Assembly (NCBI GenBank): GCA_965649765.1
Contig: OZ287748.1
Location: 34,286,001-34,350,000, forward strand
Direction: 5' to 3'
DNA length: 64,000 nucleotides
Source of the DNA: Bispira polyomma
Taxonomy: Eukaryota
Position 1 is the stretch's first letter. Each line of letters starts with the position of its first letter. Positions 16,241 through 26,250 of the stretch are shown here, piece after piece. The position numbers and the translations under genes were made by a program. The notes below the pieces were generated by a model. That model did not search any database. It was not told where the DNA came from and worked only from the letters and a program-made list of their open reading frames with translations.

Positions 16241-17175
16241 TAAAAATTCACAAGATACTTGAGCCTGAAGCAAGGCTAACTGCTGCCCATTCTTTTTCTC
16301 AATGGCCCGATCACTGGGAGAGTTTAAAATAATTTGGGAGATGTAGATTACATTAGGTCTGTATTAACAGCCTCACACACGAGCCGGTGCTGTCGTCCAA
16401 ATTGAGAATTATGTGACCAAGAATCAAGTGGAGATTCCTAGAAGTGGATGGCAAAGTGATACAGGGGTATTTCCATATGGTCCTCCCTAATTCGATTTGT
16501 AGTGGAACGAGCAGATGGGTTCTAATGAGAAAAACGGCTGAGACTGGGAGAGAGATGGAAAGCAAGAGGAGGGGAAAGAGCAAATCTGTCCCGTATGCAG
16601 ATGATATAGATGTAATGGCTAGAGGGGTTTTTGTTGTCGAAAATATTATATACATGATATATGTATATGATGGGTATTGTTCATGGTCTTGTATGCAAGA
16701 TGCTCTTTATTGAAAAAAAACAATTAATTATGAACCCGTTCGTGAACTTGAAAGCATATTATTTTCTATAAAGAATTTTATATGCTAAAATAATGTTGCA
16801 GTTGCACAATAAAAAAATTGTGAAAGTTATCATTTACAATTTTAATCAATGTACTAAATAAAATAGGCACATTTCGTATTATACAGAAATAGGACATTTA
16901 GCATGCAATGGTAGCATAATTGTGAGTTGTTACTGTTTTAGAAATGTCACATAATAAAAATAAGATATGTTTGTTTATAAAGTACAATGTACATCGGTAT
17001 ACGTTCTTATGTAAGAACGTGCAATGAGATGAAATAATGCCAAAGTGTTCTGATCATGTATCTGAATGTACAAAATATGCTGCAAACAAAATGAAAAAAA
17101 AAAAACTGCCTCTCCTTTTCTGTTTTCATGTTGTTTCCCTCTGATAGAAGGTTAGAAAATTACCAAGACACCGTT

Positions 17176-17181
17176 TTTATT
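17176..17181 (-). promoter_or_regulatory. Candidate distal poly(A) signal of Pou4 (AATAAA)
   Basis: TTTATT on the + strand, with a U/GU-rich tract downstream on the minus strand (~17105-17085). It ends a repeat-poor AT-rich block that starts at the stop codon. Other AATAAA candidates exist. Confidence 0.4.
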
Positions 17182-20100
17182 CATTACATTTAATAATAAA
17201 TAATCTTGAACAGTAATTAGTATATTAATTTATGAAAACAAAATATCGTTTGAAAAATGTCTCTGACAATATAAATACAATTAATGAACATATAATGGTT
17301 AATTTAATACAAGCAAAAGATATACAAGTCATTTTTTTAAAGTGGGTAGAAGCTGTAACATTCTAATTTGTGGGTTGGACATCTGGGTATGCAACTTTAC
17401 TCAACTGCCTTCTATTTTAGAACTGGATTTTAGTCATTTGGCATGAAATAAAATATGACAACAGTAAAGTTTTTAAAACTTTATTACTTTCATATATATA
17501 TATATATATATATGTGTTACTTGAAACTATATATGGATACAAAATTGAATGAAATGTACAGTATTAACAATAACACAAGTGATATACATGATTTATATTA
17601 TAAATATTAGAAATGTGATCCTAAACAAAGTACAGTTACTATTTTAACTCTCTTTTATAGATATAAAAAGAGAGATTGGTGTAAAACCTTCAGTTCTTCA
17701 AAATACTCTAAAAGTATGGTATCCAAATTACACAATTTTAATCAGCCAGTGTTTATGAAAAAATTAAATTAATGTGTCATTTGCATAGAATATTTGGTAG
17801 ACATATTAAAACCAATATTTTTCTGAACAAATAGAATTTTCTGATGCATTTTAACCAAACTAGATTTCACTCTCATGCAAAAATAAATACATTCCAGATT
17901 TTAATGAAAAAAGTCAATTCTAATTTTCCTTAATTTATTAACAAAATATGCGCCTCTGTTTCTATTTCCAAACACTAACTCCAACCACAACTCATTATGA
18001 CACCAAAAATCCTTAAAGATAAAAAAATTATGTTGAAAACCTATTAAATACCTAATTGTACTGTACAAAACAATTGTTTTGATTACAATGCCCCCCTCTC
18101 AGTACTTTGGCCAGACATTGCTCTCTGCTAATCATTGATATCAAGAGCCCAGAGTACTTACTACTACTACATATACAACTACATAACCAGACCAAAGGAA
18201 TGTATTAATGCCAGACAGCACAGGAGGAGGGGATACATGAATTTTTAAACATCAAAACAAACTCGACCTGTATTTGAATATTTTATAAGGAGAAAAATCC
18301 ACAGTAGGATGGAGAGGGGGGGAGGGGAGGGGTGTGTTCTGTTATGGCTTTGGCTCACCCCACTAGTACTACTCACTAGTTGTAGTACTACAGTAGCCAA
18401 TTCAATAATGATCCTACTCTTACTAAGTAGAGCAGACTAATAAATGTGTCCTAGAAACAAAAATTCTTATTTGGGGTGTAAAAAATGCAAGGCAGGTGTA
18501 TAAATAATTAAAACTACACGATGTACATATTTTTGTGTAAAACCCCTTCTATATTATCGCCGCCTTACATCTCGTCATATAATATCAATTACCCCAATGG
18601 ATACATTTGTGTTGTGTGGGGGTAGGGGGATGATAATGAAAACTGTTTGAAATTATGGTTTTAAAATAACTTAATTAACTGATCACCTTGTAAGATCTTC
18701 ATTATATTTACACATTAAACAAAATGATTTTTTTGTTCATTTTGTCTGAATGGTGTGTAATTTGTAACAGAAGGCTTTCTAAAGTTACTATCTTGACGTC
18801 AATGAAGCAACTTTTTGTTACATTATATACACATATATATATTGCTAACCTCTGTCACAATTCACTAATAAATTCAAAATGGAAAAAGATCAGTGTATTT
18901 TCATACACCAGTAGTTTATAACTGTACTTTTTTTAATGAACACATGATAACATACATCGCAATGTTGATAACATAAATACATGCACTATAAGTATATTTC
19001 ATTTCTGCCTAGTGTTTTGGGCAAATATTCAGTTTCCTGCTAATTTAACCAGATGGAAGTAGTAAAAGTCAACATTTTTCTTACAACTTATTAGAGTATT
19101 GGATTTTAAAGGTCAATGATCATGTTTTATGTTTCACACACAAAGACTGATATTGGAGCAGCAAACCAGCTTATTGTTAGAGTGATCAGAGAGTCAGATT
19201 AAATGTGACTTGTAAATGGCCTCAACTGGTAGTCCTATCAGCTGTTATTTTAACAACAATGGTTTGACAGGAGGCTGGGGTGTCTGTATAGTGAGAAACA
19301 GAGAGGGATATTCTGCGCAAGTTCTTCTCTTTTTATTGTCCATATGTGCATGGATTTTTGTAATTCAGATTCAGATACGGGAAGGGGGGGGGGGGAATAA
19401 AATATACAGTTACTCTCTATAGTAATGTTTACTGCTATTCCTGCTAAATTGTAAATACAACAGTTTTAAATTGATATATATAACAAATCACTGGTAAAAT
19501 AGTGACTTCTGTCAAATTATTGGTGAGTTTTCTATTTAGATATATTACCTTTTACCTTTGTTTTTGGGCAGTGAGATGCATGTGACTTTTAGTAGCTATT
19601 TTAGCTGAATACCTACCCCCCCCCCCCCCCCCCCCCCTTGTCAACACATCTTAATATTGTCAGAACTTTCTTAAATATTTTCTGTATTAATTGAGTGTTT
19701 TATTTGGCCAAGAACAACTCTTCACTCATTAAGTCCATACATTAAAAAAGATATTAACATATCCCTTATTTAACAGGGTCTGAATGGTATATAACAATTC
19801 TTGTTGCTGTCTCTAGTATAACACTGACACCAAACCCACAGAAACTATTCACTGGTTCTACTCAGAATACTGAAGATGGCAATAGTTAGCAAACTACTCT
19901 AGCACTAGAACTGGTTGCAAAACAACACATATGCCGTGGCTATGAAAATAATATAATAACTGATAAAACTAGTGACTAGAACAGTGATTGTATAAATATA
20001 CATATTAGACGAATTAAAATCTGGTAATTATCTTAAAGATATCATTAAAAAAAACAACTGTCGCCATATGTCTAAGTCTTGCAAAAATATAAGCAAACAA

Positions 20101-21758
20101 TATTTATGAAATCCTTGATGCATACATTTTTATATATACATGTCTTTCAGACATATATAGATATATAGCATCCTGTGATTTATACCTATTACAAAGATAC
20201 AAAGATAACAAGAATATAAATTAGATATAGATAGATGTATATGAAGTATAGACTTGCTTTAGTTCATACTCTCCAGGTTAAAATTAAAAAAATACATATG
20301 AATGTAAATAATATCAAGAGTGAAGTGGTTGATTTGACTCATGTAAACCTGTTTAATATTTCAAGTGTAGTTTTTAAGCTACTTGATATTATGGGTAAAA
20401 TAAGAATATATAATAAGAGTATTTAAAAGGGAGAGCTTGATACAATTATGTCAATGTGAATGATAGACATACAGGTATTTTTAAGGTTTTATAAAACATT
20501 AGACTAATTCTGGTAGTACCAGTTCAAAAGCTGTTGTAAATCAGTTCACATGAAATATGTTAACACCTTATATTCTGGAGAGAATATATCGAGTATATGT
20601 GAGCTTATTTATGATATATCTTAAATTTTCTAATAATTTCAGACATAGAGAATGAATATTACAGCTTTGAATTCTGAAAACAAAACCAAAAGTAACCAAC
20701 TAATCTTTCATGTAGACATGTACTGTATTGATAATGTCATGAGTCCTATATGGTTGAACAAATCCTTCCTAAATCAAGTGAATATAAGAAATTGGTGACT
20801 AGGTGTAACTAACTAGATATTGGTAGGATTTGGTAAGACATATTAACATATGTAACATAATGGACATCTTTAAAATCAACATTGCAAAGTTCTACAATCC
20901 TTTTGCAAATGCTACATATTTCACATGACAAAAAGGTCAAAACATATTTGACATGAACAATTGTCAAACATGTTAAACACACTTATGAATTTTCTTATAT
21001 GTTAAAATCCTAAAAGTGTATACTATTTTATAGATGTAGTATTCCTGACTTTGGGGCAATTTACTTCATAAACAAATATAAATTAACATTTCATTCAATC
21101 TTAATGTTTTACACTAATACTGAAAAAAAAAAAATTTGACTCATTCTGTAATTCTTGTAAGAACAGAAAACATACACATGTAAAACATACTATTCTGACT
21201 AGATTCAGTATGACTAGCTTTGAAATGCAATATCCCTTGACTAGAGCTACAAAAATTATATTAATTGTATATTATACAAGGACCATTTTAGGCTATGGAT
21301 AATATGAGGAAATGTGTATGGTTAATGTAAATATTATATTATAATACACGTAATACCAATTGGAATGTTAAACTTGGAACTTATGTTAATTATGTTAAAT
21401 GAATGGATAGAAGTCTGTCAGACAGCATCAGGAATGTAAAAAAGTAAGTTTTATAACTGGGGAAATATTGTTCACTAGTACAGTCTTAATATAATAGATG
21501 ACATGTCTTGTTAAACTGCATTACAGTCGGGTTTTTTACTAAATGTCGAAGCCACTATTGCAAGATTTATTTTTGAAACAATTTTAGCACTTCTCTATGA
21601 CGTTGATAAGGTCAGTGTGCAAAAGAGGTGTAATGAACCTTCTCAAACCACAAACCCTGACACCCACAACACTGTACACCCACCCACCCACACCCCATAC
21701 CCTCCTCCCACTTAATATACTCTCAATAAAATCAATAAATGCAAACCCCCATCACCCC

Positions 21759-22886
21759 CTAGGAATGAGCTACAGGCGAGTGTTGTCCTTGTACTGTAGC
21801 TGAGAACTTCATTCGTTTCTGTTTCTGTCTCTGGTTACAAAACCACACCCTCACCACGTTCTTCTTCAAGTCTAATTTCTCTGCAATCTGTGCAATCTTT
21901 TCTCCAGATGGTCTTGGCTGAATGGCAAAGTAGGCTTCCAAGGAGCGCTTCTCTGGTGCAGCGATAGATGTGCGCTTGCGTTTCTTTTCTGCGTTAGCAT
22001 ACGCCTCTGAACTCGCCTTGGCCTGTCTGGCTGCAGTCTCTGCCTCTTCCAGCCATGTTTGTAGCACGGGTTTCAGGGCAATCATATTATTATGGCTCAG
22101 TGTCAGCGACTCAAACCGACAGATTGTGCTCTGACTTAAGGAGCCCACCCCAGGGATTTTCAGCTTACCCAGAGCACACCCCACATCGGCCTGTGTCACC
22201 CCTAATTTGATCCGCCTCTGCTTAAAGTGTTCAGCAAATGCCTCCAATTCTCTGGGGTCAGAGTCCATTTCAGGGTGCTGCTGCTGCTGTTGCTGCTGTT
22301 GGCTATGGGGATGACTGGGTGAGATGGAAGCACTAGGGGGCTGTGGTGTGACCCCAGTGTGACTAGTTAGAGAACTCAGAGTTAAAGAGGTTTGAGATAT
22401 AAGTTGTGGATGTTCCATTGGTTGTTGTGTATGTTGTTGCTGCTGTTGTTGTGTATGTTGTTGTTGTGTATGTTGTGTGTGTTGCTGTTGTTGTTGACTT
22501 TCAGGTGACACTGACATAGCAGTGCTCAGGTTATTGGACACACTCATTGGGGAGTGGGCGTAAGAGTTCATTGAGTACATTTGAGCTGTATGTCCGTGTG
22601 TAGATATCCCAAAGCCATTGTGCTCCGGAGCTATCCCTCCCATGGGCATATGTACACTGCTAAGCTGTTCTAACATAGACTCGCCCATATGTGGTCCAAA
22701 GCCGGATAATGACAACTGTCCCCTGGATGGTGGCATGTTGGGATTATGAGGAGGCATGTCGGCATGACCGAAGGGACCCTCTGTCCGAATCATGTGATTG
22801 GTGGAGGTAGATTTGCTGATATCTGAGGCAGCCAGGGCCTCTGCCCTGGCCAGAAGGTTGTCTTCCATGGTTCCATAGAGGTTACC
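21759..22886 (-). CDS. Pou4: POU class IV homeodomain transcription factor, coding exon 2 (POU-IV box C-half, POU-specific domain, homeodomain, TAG stop)
   Basis: Acceptor tgttttgtttctag|GGT AAC. Encodes GNLYGTMEDNLLARAEALAA (POU-IV box), DPRELEAFAEHFKQRRIKLGVTQADVG...SQSTICRFESLTLSHNNMIALKP (POU-specific domain) and KKRKRTSIAAPEKRSLEAYF...VVRVWFCNQRQKQKRMK (class IV homeodomain). Confidence 0.98.
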   Translation of the reverse strand, partial: GNLYGTMEDNLLARAEALAASDISKSTSTNHMIRTEGPFGHADMPPHNPNMPPSRGQLSLSGFGPHMGESMLEQLSSVHMPMGGIAPEHNGFGISTHGHTAQMYSMNSYAHSPMSVSNNLSTAMSVSPESQQQQQHTQHTQQQHTQQQQQQHTQQPMEHPQLISQTSLTLSSLTSHTGVTPQPPSASISPSHPHSQQQQQQQQHPEMDSDPRELEAFAEHFKQRRIKLGVTQADVGCALGKLKIPGVGSLSQSTICRFESLTLSHNNMIALKPVLQTWLEEAETAARQAKASSEAYANAEKKRKRTSIAAPEKRSLEAYFAIQPRPSGEKIAQIAEKLDLKKNVVRVWFCNQRQKQKRMKFSATVQGQHSPVAHS

Positions 22887-25800
22887 CTAGAAACAAAACA
22901 ACAAAATATGACAGTCACTGGTCACACAAAAAAAACATTCCTTATTCATATTTATACTCATCTATTAATGTTTATCAATGGTGTCTTGTATTCAAAGCAC
23001 AAATTTACCTTTTCTTCACTGTCCTACATTAAGAGAGATGCTTGGGGATGACTATTTATCAACGTACCCAATGTTATTCAGGGATTTAACCTCAGCTAGT
23101 GTTTTACCTACTAGGACCATAATGGCAGATGACATACATTTAGCTTTCAAAACATTTCTTTCAAAAGCTTGCCAAAATAATATAAATAAACCTTAAGGTT
23201 CCATGGGGATCATTTGGATATTCATTGGGTTCCGGTTTGTTATTCTGTAATAACTTTATGGGGAAATATATCATGTGTGATTTATCTCTGTTTCAGAGTG
23301 TCACATTACAATTGATAATAAATTTTGAGTACATTATTTGTGATACTATTCTGTTTCAAAGTGACTACACCACAGATATTATTTTTTTCGGCAAAAACGT
23401 TCCTGTTGTAAGGCTATACCTTTTTATAGCAAAAGTGACAAAATAGAAAACTGTTAGAAAGATATACTTCACATTCACATTCAGTTATAATTATTTAATT
23501 TTCAGTAACAGTAGTAGTTACTCAGAATATGTTAAAGGAAGTGTAACATCTGAAACTGCAACATAAAAGTGAACCTCATCCTATGAGCCTTGTATCAAAT
23601 GCTATTGGAAGACATCTGATTAAAAATTTATCAATGGTTACTTTGTTTATCACCCCACAGGAGTTTCTTGTTACAAGGTACGCATTCCACAAACATGCAT
23701 ACTCTCGTGTTGTAAAGGCTTTGGTCATTTACAAAATTTTGTGCAAAATTTTATTGTAAAGTTGTATATAGAGGCAAGTGTAAAAAAATCTTATCCTAAA
23801 CTTGCATCAGACTTCTTTACTCCATGAACCTTCATAATGTACTATTAAACTTGGCCTTCAGATGTATCAAGGTCAAACTAATATTATTAGTAAACCATAG
23901 AAAGCGACTGTCATAGACATGTATATTGTTTTATCATAAATTACTATCATTTTGTTACAAAAACACTAATAAGCAATTCCACACTGTCCATTTTTGATTT
24001 GAAATTTAAACTTATCTTAATTACACAAATACACTTAATCTATCCAACAAATGTTTGCATGGCTATTACAGTAAATATAATCTTTTAAGTCTAAGGCAAC
24101 ATAGTACAAAGTTAAAGACACATCATATGGATGGTAGTTATTCAACTTATCAGCATTCCATAGAAATGCGTTTCTATGGCAAACAGTTTCAGTCAACAGG
24201 ACGAGAAACATATGAAAATGTTTTAGTACCTGATAGGCGAAACTGTTAGAACCATTTTCAATTAATTGATTGCATCTATAAAGTGTGACCCATCCCTAAT
24301 TGTATCTTCAAACATAACTATGAGCCAGGGGGACCCGGTGGTTATATAGATTGGACAATGGTGTCAGCTACATAGACAATCAGTTAAATATTACCAGTCC
24401 ATGTAGTGACAGAAATAAATATCGGTCAATAAATGTATGGGTTTAGATTAAAGTGGCGCAGCTCCAAATGTAGCTTAGGTTTATGGCTCAATATTCAATA
24501 AATGCATTTTTATAAAAGGCTTTGGTATAACATGATTCCCAGGATAAGCCAGCATCTCATATAACACCAATGACATTTGTCAATTGAATAATTAAGACCA
24601 AGAATAAAGTATCATTAATGTTAAAGGGAACTTAAATGACATAAACAAACTTAATTCAATTCTCTAATTCCACCCTCTATAATAATACACTTCGGTTTAT
24701 TACCTCTACAAATATATATTCAAAAATAATTTCTGGTACATTTCAATTGTCATCTCCTTAACTACAAATGGACTACAATAAACTGTGATACAAACTTATA
24801 CTTTACATTATATTGAGACAAATTAACATGATTAAGAAGAATACAAATCACACTTAATAATTGTAGTATCTTTAGTACTACTAATTTGCTACAGTTAATA
24901 CACATTTACAGCAGTAGGTATTTGTCTATTTACCCAAGTATTCAGTATCAAACTGTGTGTGGTATGTGTGAAGTTTACCAGTTGTGTCAACACAGAGACA
25001 GTCCAGGTAAATATAACAATCGCTCTTCCTGACAGTCACTTTAATGATTTTCTGATTTGTCACACACAAATACAAAGACAGGTAAATTCAGCTTTAAATG
25101 ATTTATTGTCTGTATGGCTTTGTGGCAAAATTTTACATTTACTTATAACTGTTAAATCATTTTGACTTTATTTTTTAGGGTTACACATGTAAAAGACAGT
25201 AGAATTCTTATATATATCGAGTACTTGATGTTTATTATATGTAGTTCAGTGTTATATAATAAAGGCATTTGACACAACAGTGAAGTTACTCCTTGCATTT
25301 TAATTGTCATCTATTTAACTAAAAATGTACCAAAACAAACTTGGAAATTATTGAGAACGTTAATGGCATACAAACTTAAACCTTATATTATCTTGAGACA
25401 AATATATGCAGAATGCAAATACACTTAACAATTGCAGTATCTTTAAAAATTCTGATTTCATGGAGTTTGAACTCTCATGAAATAACATAAGTATACATGA
25501 AATAATAAACATCGGTTGATACAAAAAAGAAAACATATACATTGTACACCACCTTTGTAAACAAAACAAAATCATTTCTGAAACATCTGTATTAAAAATT
25601 TAAAAAAAAGTTTTTGTCGGCCATACCTCAACTGTAACTTCAATAGGAATTATTTAAAAAACTATTTTTTGAATAAAATAAAATATAACAATCTACCCAC
25701 CTTATTTTAGCGCGTACCATTACAGTAAATTCCTTTTTAGCCCAATGTAATACCCCACAGCTTATAATTATTTAAATCCTTAATCACTCCTGAATCTCCA

Positions 25801-26118: not shown

Positions 26119-26250
26119 CGCTGGATTAGCTATCCTCCGCATCGACTCGGGAGGGGGATGGCGGTAGGGTGGGGAATATCGCCCCGGCAATGCACTGGGG
26201 TGGAGAGAAACGTGCATCCCAACCACCCCTTGTTTAGATTCCATCATCAT
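26119..26250 (-). CDS. Pou4: Pou4 coding exon 1 (44 aa)
   Basis: MMMESKQGVVGMHVSLHPSALPGRYSPPYRHPPPESMRRIANPA. The PGRYSPxYR...MRR..NP pattern is the invertebrate Pou4/acj6-type N-terminus. The ATG context is CAACAATG. Confidence 0.92.

What the first reader, a model, noticed from the sequence alone, without database searches (positions are those of the whole stretch)
19973..21245. Cluster of five miR-279-family seed sites in the Pou4 3'UTR
Seen: TGACTAG(A) on the + strand, i.e. (U)CUAGUCA on the mRNA, at 21238-21245 (8mer), 21211-21217 (7mer-A1), 21196-21203 (8mer, match extends to position 9), 20796-20802 (7mer-A1) and 19973-19980 (8mer). Three sites fall within 50 bp, a spacing compatible with cooperative repression. 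By eye I found only about six other + strand TGACTAG in the rest of the window. Established: miR-279/996 (UGACUAGAUCC...) is a protostome family controlling sensory neuron specification in Drosophila via nerfin-1 and escargot. I do not know of Pou4 being described as its target.
Basis: partly seen in the sequence, partly recalled or inferred. Interest (0 to 1): 0.8.

Follow-up and report, generated by a model that had tools for sequence, protein, structure and literature searches.

The report
Conserved miR-279 sites downstream of Pou4
Just after the stop codon of a sensory-neuron transcription factor gene (Pou4) in what is probably an annelid worm lie five matches to the microRNA miR-279; they are far more than chance gives and recur in a related species, so Pou4 is a well-supported but still untested new target of this microRNA.

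Summary
TGACTAG(A) lies on the + strand at all five stated places. These are 515-1780 nt downstream of the stop codon of a class IV POU gene on the minus strand (exon 2 CDS 21759-22886), and they read (U)CUAGUCA in the mRNA sense.

Five sites were seen against about 0.08-0.15 expected. None lies on the antisense strand, the stretch is single copy, and no repeat explains the sites.

The same genome holds at least 12 mir-279-family hairpins whose 3' arms carry the seed GACUAGA.

The closest relative found has dS 0.78 in the coding exon and an otherwise unalignable 3' flank. It also has five sites, 641-778 nt after its stop. Two of them align with window sites as 9-nt islands of identity. In an unbiased count, CUAGUCA is the top shared 7-mer of the two flanks.

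A tandem Pou4 paralogue carries one conserved 8mer. Several other annelid-side Pou4 loci carry one or two sites. Two molluscs and four unnamed loci carry none.

No RNA data exist, so inclusion in the transcript, miRNA expression and repression remain inferred.

Verdict: a real, selected, lineage-restricted miR-279 response cluster, and a new target of a known kind.

The parts
26119..26250 (-). Pou4-A exon 1 coding part (44 codons from the ATG, ending at a GT donor, phase 0)
   Evidence: tblastn of the N-termini of mollusc Pou4 proteins found (Patella P0045, E = 0.002), plus the reading frame and donor seen in the sequence.
21759..22886 (-). Pou4-A exon 2 coding part: POU-IV box, POU-specific domain and homeodomain. 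The stop codon is at 21759-21761.
   Evidence: ORF. Pfam Pou 4.7e-31 and Homeodomain 1.9e-18. Homologues are named POU class 4. AG acceptor before GGT at 22886. dN 0.033 and dS 0.78 against the relative.
19973..21758 (-). Inferred minimum extent of the 3'UTR if all five sites are in the mRNA. Candidate poly(A) hexamers lie 188, 1402, 2055 and 2422 nt after the stop.
   Evidence: Inference only. No RNA run exists. Poly(A) hexamer positions are. Sense-strand depletion of these hexamers is mild.
21238..21245 (-). miR-279-family 8mer site, 515 nt after the stop. It aligns with the first site of the relative's cluster.
21211..21217 (-). miR-279-family 7mer-A1 site, 542 nt after the stop. It is specific to this species.
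21196..21203 (-). miR-279-family 8mer site, 557 nt after the stop. The match runs on to miRNA position 9. It aligns with the second site of the relative's cluster.
20796..20802 (-). miR-279-family 7mer-A1 site, 957 nt after the stop.
19973..19980 (-). miR-279-family 8mer site, 1780 nt after the stop. It is the one most at risk of lying beyond the poly(A) site.

Best explanation
The five (U)CUAGUCA motifs are canonical seed-match response elements for the miR-279 family. They lie in the long 3'UTR of one of two tandem Pou4 genes (here called Pou4-A) of a probable annelid. The proposed mechanism has three steps. First, Argonaute loaded with any of the at least 12 miR-279 paralogues (shared seed GACUAGA) binds the sites. 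Second, the three proximal sites, 15 and 27 nt apart, act cooperatively. Third, Pou4-A mRNA is destabilised or translationally repressed in cells that express miR-279, which sharpens or restricts expression of this sensory-neuron selector gene. Shown here: the sites, their orientation, their enrichment, their retention under selection in a diverged relative, and cognate hairpins in the same genome. Inferred: that the stretch is part of the Pou4-A mRNA, that the miRNAs are expressed, and that repression occurs.
For: 1. All five sites sit at the stated places in mRNA sense. The gene is class IV POU and under purifying selection (dN 0.033, dS 0.78).
2. Enrichment is 5 against 0.149 expected (P 5.5e-7). 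The genome-wide rate is 0.0447 per kb per strand.
3. The orthologous gene of the closest relative (L014) has 5 sites (four 8mers) 641-778 nt after its stop, against 0.145 expected (P 4.8e-7). Two of these (733 and 754) look like a 21-nt local duplication.
4. The two 3' flanks are otherwise unalignable there. At p = 0.37 per fourfold site, a neutral 7-mer would survive about 4% of the time (my arithmetic).
5. In the site-level alignment, two window sites align with two L014 sites as 9-nt identity islands.
6. In an unbiased count of all 7-mers, CUAGUCA is the top shared word (5 and 5; the next independent word has 2). It ranks first by P in L014 and second in the window.
7. Strand specificity: 0 antisense copies in the first 2 kb of any of 14 Pou4 loci.
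8. Motif edges fit a seed site. Every CUAGUC is followed by A. Nine of the twelve sites of the A and B genes of both species are preceded by U.
9. The tandem paralogue Pou4-B has one 8mer, conserved between the two species. Non-A loci pooled have 7 sense sites against 1.2 expected (P 2.5e-4).
10. The genome has at least 12 mir-279 hairpins in four clusters (Rfam RF00754, best 58 bits against a cut-off of 56). All carry the GACUAGA seed in the 3' arm. The five that were shuffle-tested fold with z of -3.9 to -6.0.
11. The stretch is single copy and free of repeats.
Against: 1. There is no transcript evidence. No RNA run holds the stretch, and the three runs found are genomic DNA contigs.
2. An AATAAA lies 188 nt after the stop, and an ATTAAA lies at 264 nt in the relative. 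A short isoform could therefore exclude every site.
3. Only one other species with a Pou4-A orthologue could be examined.
4. There are no sites within 6 kb in L015, L017, L022 and L065, nor in Ostrea or Haliotis, so the link is not ancient or general.
5. No small-RNA data show that the hairpins are processed or where they are expressed. Only one hairpin passes Rfam's gathering score.
6. Predicted duplexes are mostly seed-only.
Confidence: 0.7

Rival explanations
1. The sites are true miR-279 response elements, but they are not in the main Pou4-A mRNA. They would lie only in a rare long-UTR isoform, or in a separate sense-strand downstream transcript such as a non-coding RNA that soaks up miR-279.
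For: Poly(A)-like hexamers lie 188 nt (window) and 264 nt (relative) after the stop, upstream of every site. No RNA data settle the transcript's end.
Against: The sites begin only about 500 nt after the stop, in both species. Poly(A) hexamers are, if anything, depleted on the sense strand over the first 2.5 kb (6 against 11.9 expected, antisense 16), as expected inside a long UTR. The B paralogue and other Pou4 loci also carry sense sites close to their stops, which ties the motif to Pou4 mRNAs.
Confidence: 0.15
2. The conserved word is recognised by something other than a miRNA: either a sequence-specific RNA-binding protein acting on the UTR, or a DNA-binding factor acting on a homotypic downstream cluster.
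For: Selection on the motif is shown, but its reader is not. A conserved non-coding block with Sox-like and E-box-like words lies 2.4 kb after the stop, so cis-regulatory DNA does exist downstream of this gene.
Against: The conserved core is exactly the 7-8 nt complement of miRNA positions 1-8 of a family that the genome encodes at least 12 times. All 17 sites in the first 2 kb of the 14 Pou4 loci are in sense orientation and none is antisense, which is unusual for DNA-binding sites. From memory, the word does not fit the Musashi, Pumilio or STAR-protein consensus motifs, nor AP-1 or Meis sites. That comparison was not tested with a tool.
Confidence: 0.1
3. The sites are a chance or compositional clustering of an AT-rich word in an AT-rich flank, with no function.
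For: The whole-window count is only modestly above shuffles (13 against 6.8, 2 of 100 shuffles reach it).
Against: The local expectation is 0.08-0.15 against 5 seen. After correction for all 16,384 7-mers, the P is still about 0.01 in each species. The same word independently tops the relative's flank. There are no antisense copies, no repeats and the stretch is single copy.
Confidence: 0.03

Closest known systems
Drosophila miR-279/miR-996 repression of nerfin-1 and escargot in CO2 sensory-neuron specification
   Same: The miRNA family and seed (UGACUAGA...) are the same. The targets are neuronal fate transcription factors with several seed sites in a long 3'UTR. The logic proposed, restricting a sensory neuron fate, is also the same. 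The role of miR-279 in restricting CO2 neurons is described in the review PMC4744966. The named targets and their multiple sites are from my own knowledge.
   Different: The target here is a class IV POU gene, which no paper in the held library links to miR-279. The animal is a probable annelid. Nothing has been tested functionally. The miRNA family is expanded to at least 12 hairpins.
Canonical multi-site, cooperative miRNA target clusters (for example let-7 sites in lin-41 or HMGA2, or miR-124 and miR-9 sites in neural transcription factor UTRs)
   Same: Several 7-8mer seed matches lie 13-40 nt apart in an AU-rich context, away from the stop codon. They are preferentially conserved against diverged flanks. 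This comparison is from established knowledge of target-site rules and was not tested here beyond the sequence features.
   Different: Conservation is shown in only two species, plus scattered single sites elsewhere. Site number and position turn over: 2 of 5 sites are alignable.
Post-transcriptional control of vertebrate Pou4f/Brn3 genes by miRNAs
   Same: The target gene family is the same, and so is the general idea that a sensory selector gene is tuned by miRNAs (from memory, not checked here).
   Different: Vertebrates lack the miR-279 family, so any such control uses unrelated miRNAs and is convergent at best.

Membership tests
Canonical miRNA seed-match target site (miR-279/286/996 family) | Contiguous Watson-Crick complement to miRNA nucleotides 2-7 or 2-8, with A opposite position 1 | tested here: met
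   Three 8mers and two 7mer-A1 sites at the stated coordinates.
Canonical miRNA seed-match target site (miR-279/286/996 family) | The site lies in the sense strand of a mature mRNA, usually in the 3'UTR | not testable with these tools
   The orientation and the position 515-1780 nt after the stop are met. No RNA run holds the stretch, and the runs laid are genomic contigs.
Canonical miRNA seed-match target site (miR-279/286/996 family) | The cognate miRNA is encoded by the same genome | tested here: met
   At least 12 hairpins in four clusters match Rfam RF00754 (best 58 bits against a cut-off of 56, others 32.8-51.6 bits below the cut-off). Their 3' arms carry the seed GACUAGA. The five shuffle-tested hairpins fold with z of -3.9 to -6.0. 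Expression was not testable.
Canonical miRNA seed-match target site (miR-279/286/996 family) | Preferential conservation of the seed match relative to its flanks | tested here: met
   The relative L014 keeps 5 sites at dS 0.78 with unalignable flanks, and two sites align as 9-nt islands. This rests on only one other Pou4-A species. Sites are absent from the two molluscs and four unnamed loci.
Canonical miRNA seed-match target site (miR-279/286/996 family) | miRNA-dependent repression or Argonaute occupancy | not testable with these tools
   This needs a reporter assay or CLIP.
mir-279 precursor family (Rfam RF00754) | Hairpin of about 85 nt scoring against the covariance model, with the mature RNA in the 3' arm beginning (U)GACUAGA | tested here: met
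   Only the hairpin at C9:8971666-8971751 exceeds the gathering score. The genome search matches have E of 4.6e-4 or better, and two weaker cmscan matches on the C7 cluster have E of 0.0028 and 0.8. All share the arm and the seed.
Class IV POU transcription factor (Pou4/Brn3/acj6/unc-86) | POU-specific domain plus POU homeodomain, with class IV homologues as best matches and an N-terminal POU-IV box | tested here: met
   Pfam PF00157 and PF00046. All named best hits are POU class 4. The LLARAEALA box aligns with annelid and mollusc Pou4.

The most novel reading that the evidence does not exclude
After a tandem duplication of Pou4 in an annelid lineage, one copy (Pou4-A) came under unusually heavy, multi-site control by a miR-279 family that had itself expanded to a dozen or more hairpins. 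The single conserved sites in Pou4-B and in other annelid-side Pou4 genes would then be the remnant of an older, annelid-wide or even protostome-wide miR-279-Pou4 link. That link would tie the miRNA that restricts sensory-neuron number in flies to the ancestral sensory selector gene.
Probability: 0.2. Interest if true: 0.65.

Novelty: new member of a known kind. Interest (0 to 1): 0.42.

Why it matters
Pou4 is a deeply conserved terminal selector of mechanosensory and other sensory neurons. miR-279 is a protostome miRNA known for limiting sensory-neuron fates in flies. A direct, selected miR-279-Pou4 link would add a post-transcriptional layer to a well-studied sensory gene network outside the model ecdysozoans. 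It would also give a concrete case of regulatory divergence between duplicated selector genes: five sites in copy A against one in copy B. The prediction is easy to test with reporters in any system that expresses the family. It is not a new kind of mechanism.

Tried and rejected
1. Transcript evidence. The look-up of sequencing runs found no RNA holder. The three runs laid are genomic contigs that span the whole stretch, so they say nothing about the UTR end.
2. Could the + strand words be miR-279 genes antisense to Pou4? Rfam finds no hairpin in 17000-23000 apart from a chance-level mir-190 match (E 0.52). Rejected.
3. Repeat or transposon origin. No direct, inverted or tandem repeat covers the sites. 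Stretch 20700-21400 is unique in the genome. Rejected.
4. A genome-wide search for three sites within about 70 nt gave 751 hits against 580 for the reversed control. Nearly all are satellites or dispersed repeats, so the search is uninformative as a rarity test.
5. The conserved block 2.4 kb after the stop holds a shared AATAAA. Conservation runs about 250 nt beyond it in islands of Sox-like and E-box-like words, so it looks like a regulatory DNA element. It cannot be used to fix the UTR end.
6. Poly(A) hexamer depletion on the sense strand is only suggestive.
7. More Pou4-A orthologues. The metagenome scan found none. Only one Pou4-A relative exists in the collections reached.
8. Deep conservation. 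There are no sites in Ostrea, Haliotis or four unnamed loci, so a pan-lophotrochozoan reading is rejected.
9. Literature. The two papers that mention both miR-279 and acj6 do not link them as miRNA and target. No miR-279 paper surfaced with Pou4, Brn3 or POU-IV among those listed. The search for annelid miR-279 expression gave nothing useful.
10. The spliced exon 1 plus exon 2 protein was not searched as a joined sequence.
Full report
**Observation**

The word TGACTAG occurs 13 times in the window, 12 of them on the + strand. Five copies are at 19973, 20796, 21196, 21211 and 21238.
- 8mers (TGACTAGA) at 21238-21245, 21196-21203 and 19973-19980.
- 7mer-A1 sites at 21211-21217 and 20796-20802.

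The three proximal sites span 50 bp, with start-to-start spacing of 15 and 27 nt.

**Gene context**

A 369-codon open frame on the minus strand (21759-22868) carries a POU-specific domain (4.7e-31) and a homeodomain (1.9e-18). Its named homologues are all class IV POU factors.

Comparison with the N-termini of annelid and mollusc Pou4 proteins, plus inspection of the splice signals, gives a two-exon coding model:
- Exon 1 at 26119-26250, ending at a GT donor.
- An intron of about 3.2 kb.
- An AG acceptor, then exon 2 at 21759-22886.

I did not search the joined protein. The exons were handled apart.

The stop codon is at 21759-21761. The five sites therefore lie 515, 542, 557, 957 and 1780 nt downstream of it, and they read (U)CUAGUCA in the sense of the mRNA.

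**More than chance?**

- A first-order Markov model of the first 2 kb after the stop expects 0.149 copies of CTAGTCA. Five are present (Poisson 5.5e-7).
- The whole genome holds 92,578 copies on both strands of 1.035 Gb, which is 0.0447 per kb per strand. That gives about 0.08 expected in the 1.79 kb concerned.
- No copy lies on the antisense strand of that stretch.
- No direct, inverted or tandem repeat produces the sites.
- Stretch 20700-21400 is single copy in the genome.
- Rfam finds no miRNA hairpin in 17000-23000 beyond a chance-level hit. The + strand words are therefore not miR-279 genes.

**Does the species have the miRNA?**

Yes.
- Rfam's mir-279 model (RF00754) matches nine places in the genome at E of 4.6e-4 or better. 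One match is above the gathering score (58 against 56 bits).
- A scan of the C7 locus shows five hairpins within 1.5 kb.
- Nine hairpins have a 3' arm beginning UGACUAGA. Three more begin A/G-GACUAGA with the same seed.
- The hairpins lie in four clusters, on contigs C7, C9, C11 and C3.
- Five that I folded form clean stem-loops, with z-scores of -3.9 to -6.0 against shuffles.
- Expression could not be tested.

**Conservation**

The closest homologue found (P0001, 88% identity over the whole exon) lies on a 437 kb ENA contig (L014).
- Its coding exon differs from the window's by dN 0.033 and dS 0.78, with 37% of fourfold sites changed. It is a distinct species, and the gene is under purifying selection.
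- The 3' flanks align only over nt 20-83 and over one block 2.4-2.7 kb (window) or 3.4-3.7 kb (L014) after the stop.
- L014 nevertheless carries five sites (four 8mers and one 7mer-A1) 641-778 nt after its stop, against 0.145 expected (4.8e-7).
- A count of all 7-mers in the first 2 kb of both flanks puts CTAGTCA first among shared words (5 and 5). The next independent word has 2. By P it ranks first in L014 and second in the window.
- In a local alignment, window site 21238 aligns with L014 site 641, and window site 21196 with L014 site 681. They appear as 9-nt islands of identity in otherwise near-random flanks.
- The other sites are lineage-specific. Two L014 sites look like a 21-nt local duplication.
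- At 37% change per neutral site, a 7-mer would persist about 4% of the time. Retention therefore implies selection on this word in this orientation.

**Wider sampling**

Both species have a second, tandem Pou4 gene, called Pou4-B here. In this genome it lies 71 kb upstream, outside the window. Each B copy has one 8mer, at 389 and 365 nt after the stop, inside a conserved block.

Other loci:
- A B-clade relative has an 8mer at 98 nt (L063).
- Two unnamed loci have 7mer-m8 sites (two in L020, one in L064).
- Lamellibrachia has an 8mer at 1918 nt.
- L015, L017, L022, L065, Ostrea edulis and Haliotis have none.

Pooled over the twelve non-A loci, there are 7 sense sites against 1.2 expected, and no antisense site (P 2.5e-4).

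In a quick maximum-likelihood tree, the window's gene and P0001 are sister to the B clade (SH-aLRT 85). The nearest named sequences are annelids. Molluscs and nemerteans fall elsewhere (this is the quick tree, because the careful search did not finish). Earlier notes of this scan also take the genome for an annelid. The species itself remains unnamed.

**What is not shown**

- No public RNA run holds the stretch.
- The three runs that hold it are genomic contigs running straight through the coding exon and flank.
- Poly(A)-like hexamers lie 188, 1402, 2055 and 2422 nt after the stop (264, 2023, 3136 and 3450 nt in L014). A short isoform without any site is therefore possible.
- Sense-strand hexamers are mildly depleted over the first 2.5 kb of both species (6 against 11.9 expected, antisense 16). 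This fits a long UTR but is weak evidence.
- The conserved distal block (window 19084-19370) includes a shared AATAAA. It then continues for about 250 nt in islands that look like Sox and E-box sites. I read it as a regulatory DNA element, not as proof of the transcript's end.

**Mechanism**

The most likely reading (0.7) is that these are canonical miR-279-family response elements in a long Pou4-A 3'UTR. The proximal trio is spaced for cooperative action. The elements would reduce Pou4-A output wherever the family is expressed.

The motif edges fit this reading. Every CUAGUC is followed by A. Nine of the twelve sites of the A and B genes in both species are preceded by U, the complement of miRNA position 8. 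Nothing beyond that is conserved. Predicted duplexes are mostly seed-only.

Rivals:
- Real miR-279 sites, but in a rare long isoform or a separate sense transcript (0.15).
- Another RNA- or DNA-binding reader of the same word (0.1).
- Chance (0.03).

**Comparison with what is known**

The closest known case is Drosophila miR-279/996, which restricts CO2 sensory neurons by repressing neuronal transcription factors (review PMC4744966; the target names are from my own knowledge). The two papers in the held library that mention both miR-279 and acj6 do not connect them as miRNA and target. No listed paper couples miR-279 with Pou4, Brn3 or POU-IV.

This is therefore a new target of a known miRNA family acting through a known mechanism. 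Evolutionary support is good in one lineage and there is no experimental support. It is of moderate interest. It is better founded than most seed-match predictions, but it is neither surprising in kind nor a key to a long-standing question.

Noticed in passing
G000:C1:34378616-34379608 (minus strand; outside the window, 71 kb upstream of Pou4-A); L032, L019: There is a tandem second Pou4 gene (Pou4-B), which is also tandem in the related species (88 kb apart on one contig). Each B copy has a single miR-279 8mer, 389 and 365 nt after the stop, inside a well-conserved block. The contrast is five sites in copy A against one in copy B.
   Followed up: partly
G000 C7:4.907-4.910 Mb, C9:8.971-8.975 Mb, C11:12.557 Mb, C3:32.064 Mb (L003, L006-L013): The mir-279 family is expanded to at least 12 hairpins in four clusters, six or more of them on C7 within about 2.3 kb. 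All share the seed GACUAGA. Three have A or G instead of U at position 1.
   Followed up: partly
window 19084-19370: This is the only long block of the Pou4-A 3' flank that aligns with the relative (70% over 295 bp). It includes a perfectly conserved 28-mer ending in AATAAAA and islands resembling Sox (CCATTGTT, AACAATAAG) and E-box (CATATG) sites. It is probably a downstream enhancer. It was not found near Pou4-B or in other species' loci.
   Followed up: partly
window 21431-21437 and 21362-21368: The miR-1 seed matches flagged in another first-stage note (s1-616389) are present. One has extended complementarity. Neither seed match has a counterpart in the first 3 kb of the relative's flank, unlike the miR-279 sites.
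   Followed up: partly
window 22360-22366: A sixth sense-oriented CTAGTCA lies inside the coding exon (codons for L-T-S-H). It is also present in the relative's coding exon. This may simply reflect amino-acid conservation.
   Followed up: partly
window 3325, 13920, 27710, 51126, 53492, 54175 (+ strand) against 14799 (- strand): Outside the UTR and the coding exon, TGACTAG is still six-to-one on the + strand, against about 2.9 expected per strand for the whole 64 kb from the genome-wide rate. This is unexplained and may be chance.
   Followed up: no
window 19616-19637: A run of 22 C (poly-G in Pou4 sense) lies between the fifth site and the conserved block. It accounts for the spike in contig depth and the loose ends there.
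   Followed up: yes
window 21661-21691: A G-rich GTGGGTG repeat (four copies in Pou4 sense, 0.06 expected) lies 68-98 nt after the stop. It is the only 7-mer in the window's flank as improbable as the miR-279 word. The relative's flank is also G-rich there, but without the repeat.
   Followed up: no
G000:C1:558039-558305 (L033): Another dense, one-strand cluster of six CTAGTCA (five of them UCUAGUCAA 8mers) lies within 270 nt. It is partly a local duplication. The ORFs upstream on the same strand were listed but not run against any protein family library, so the gene it belongs to is not identified.
   Followed up: partly
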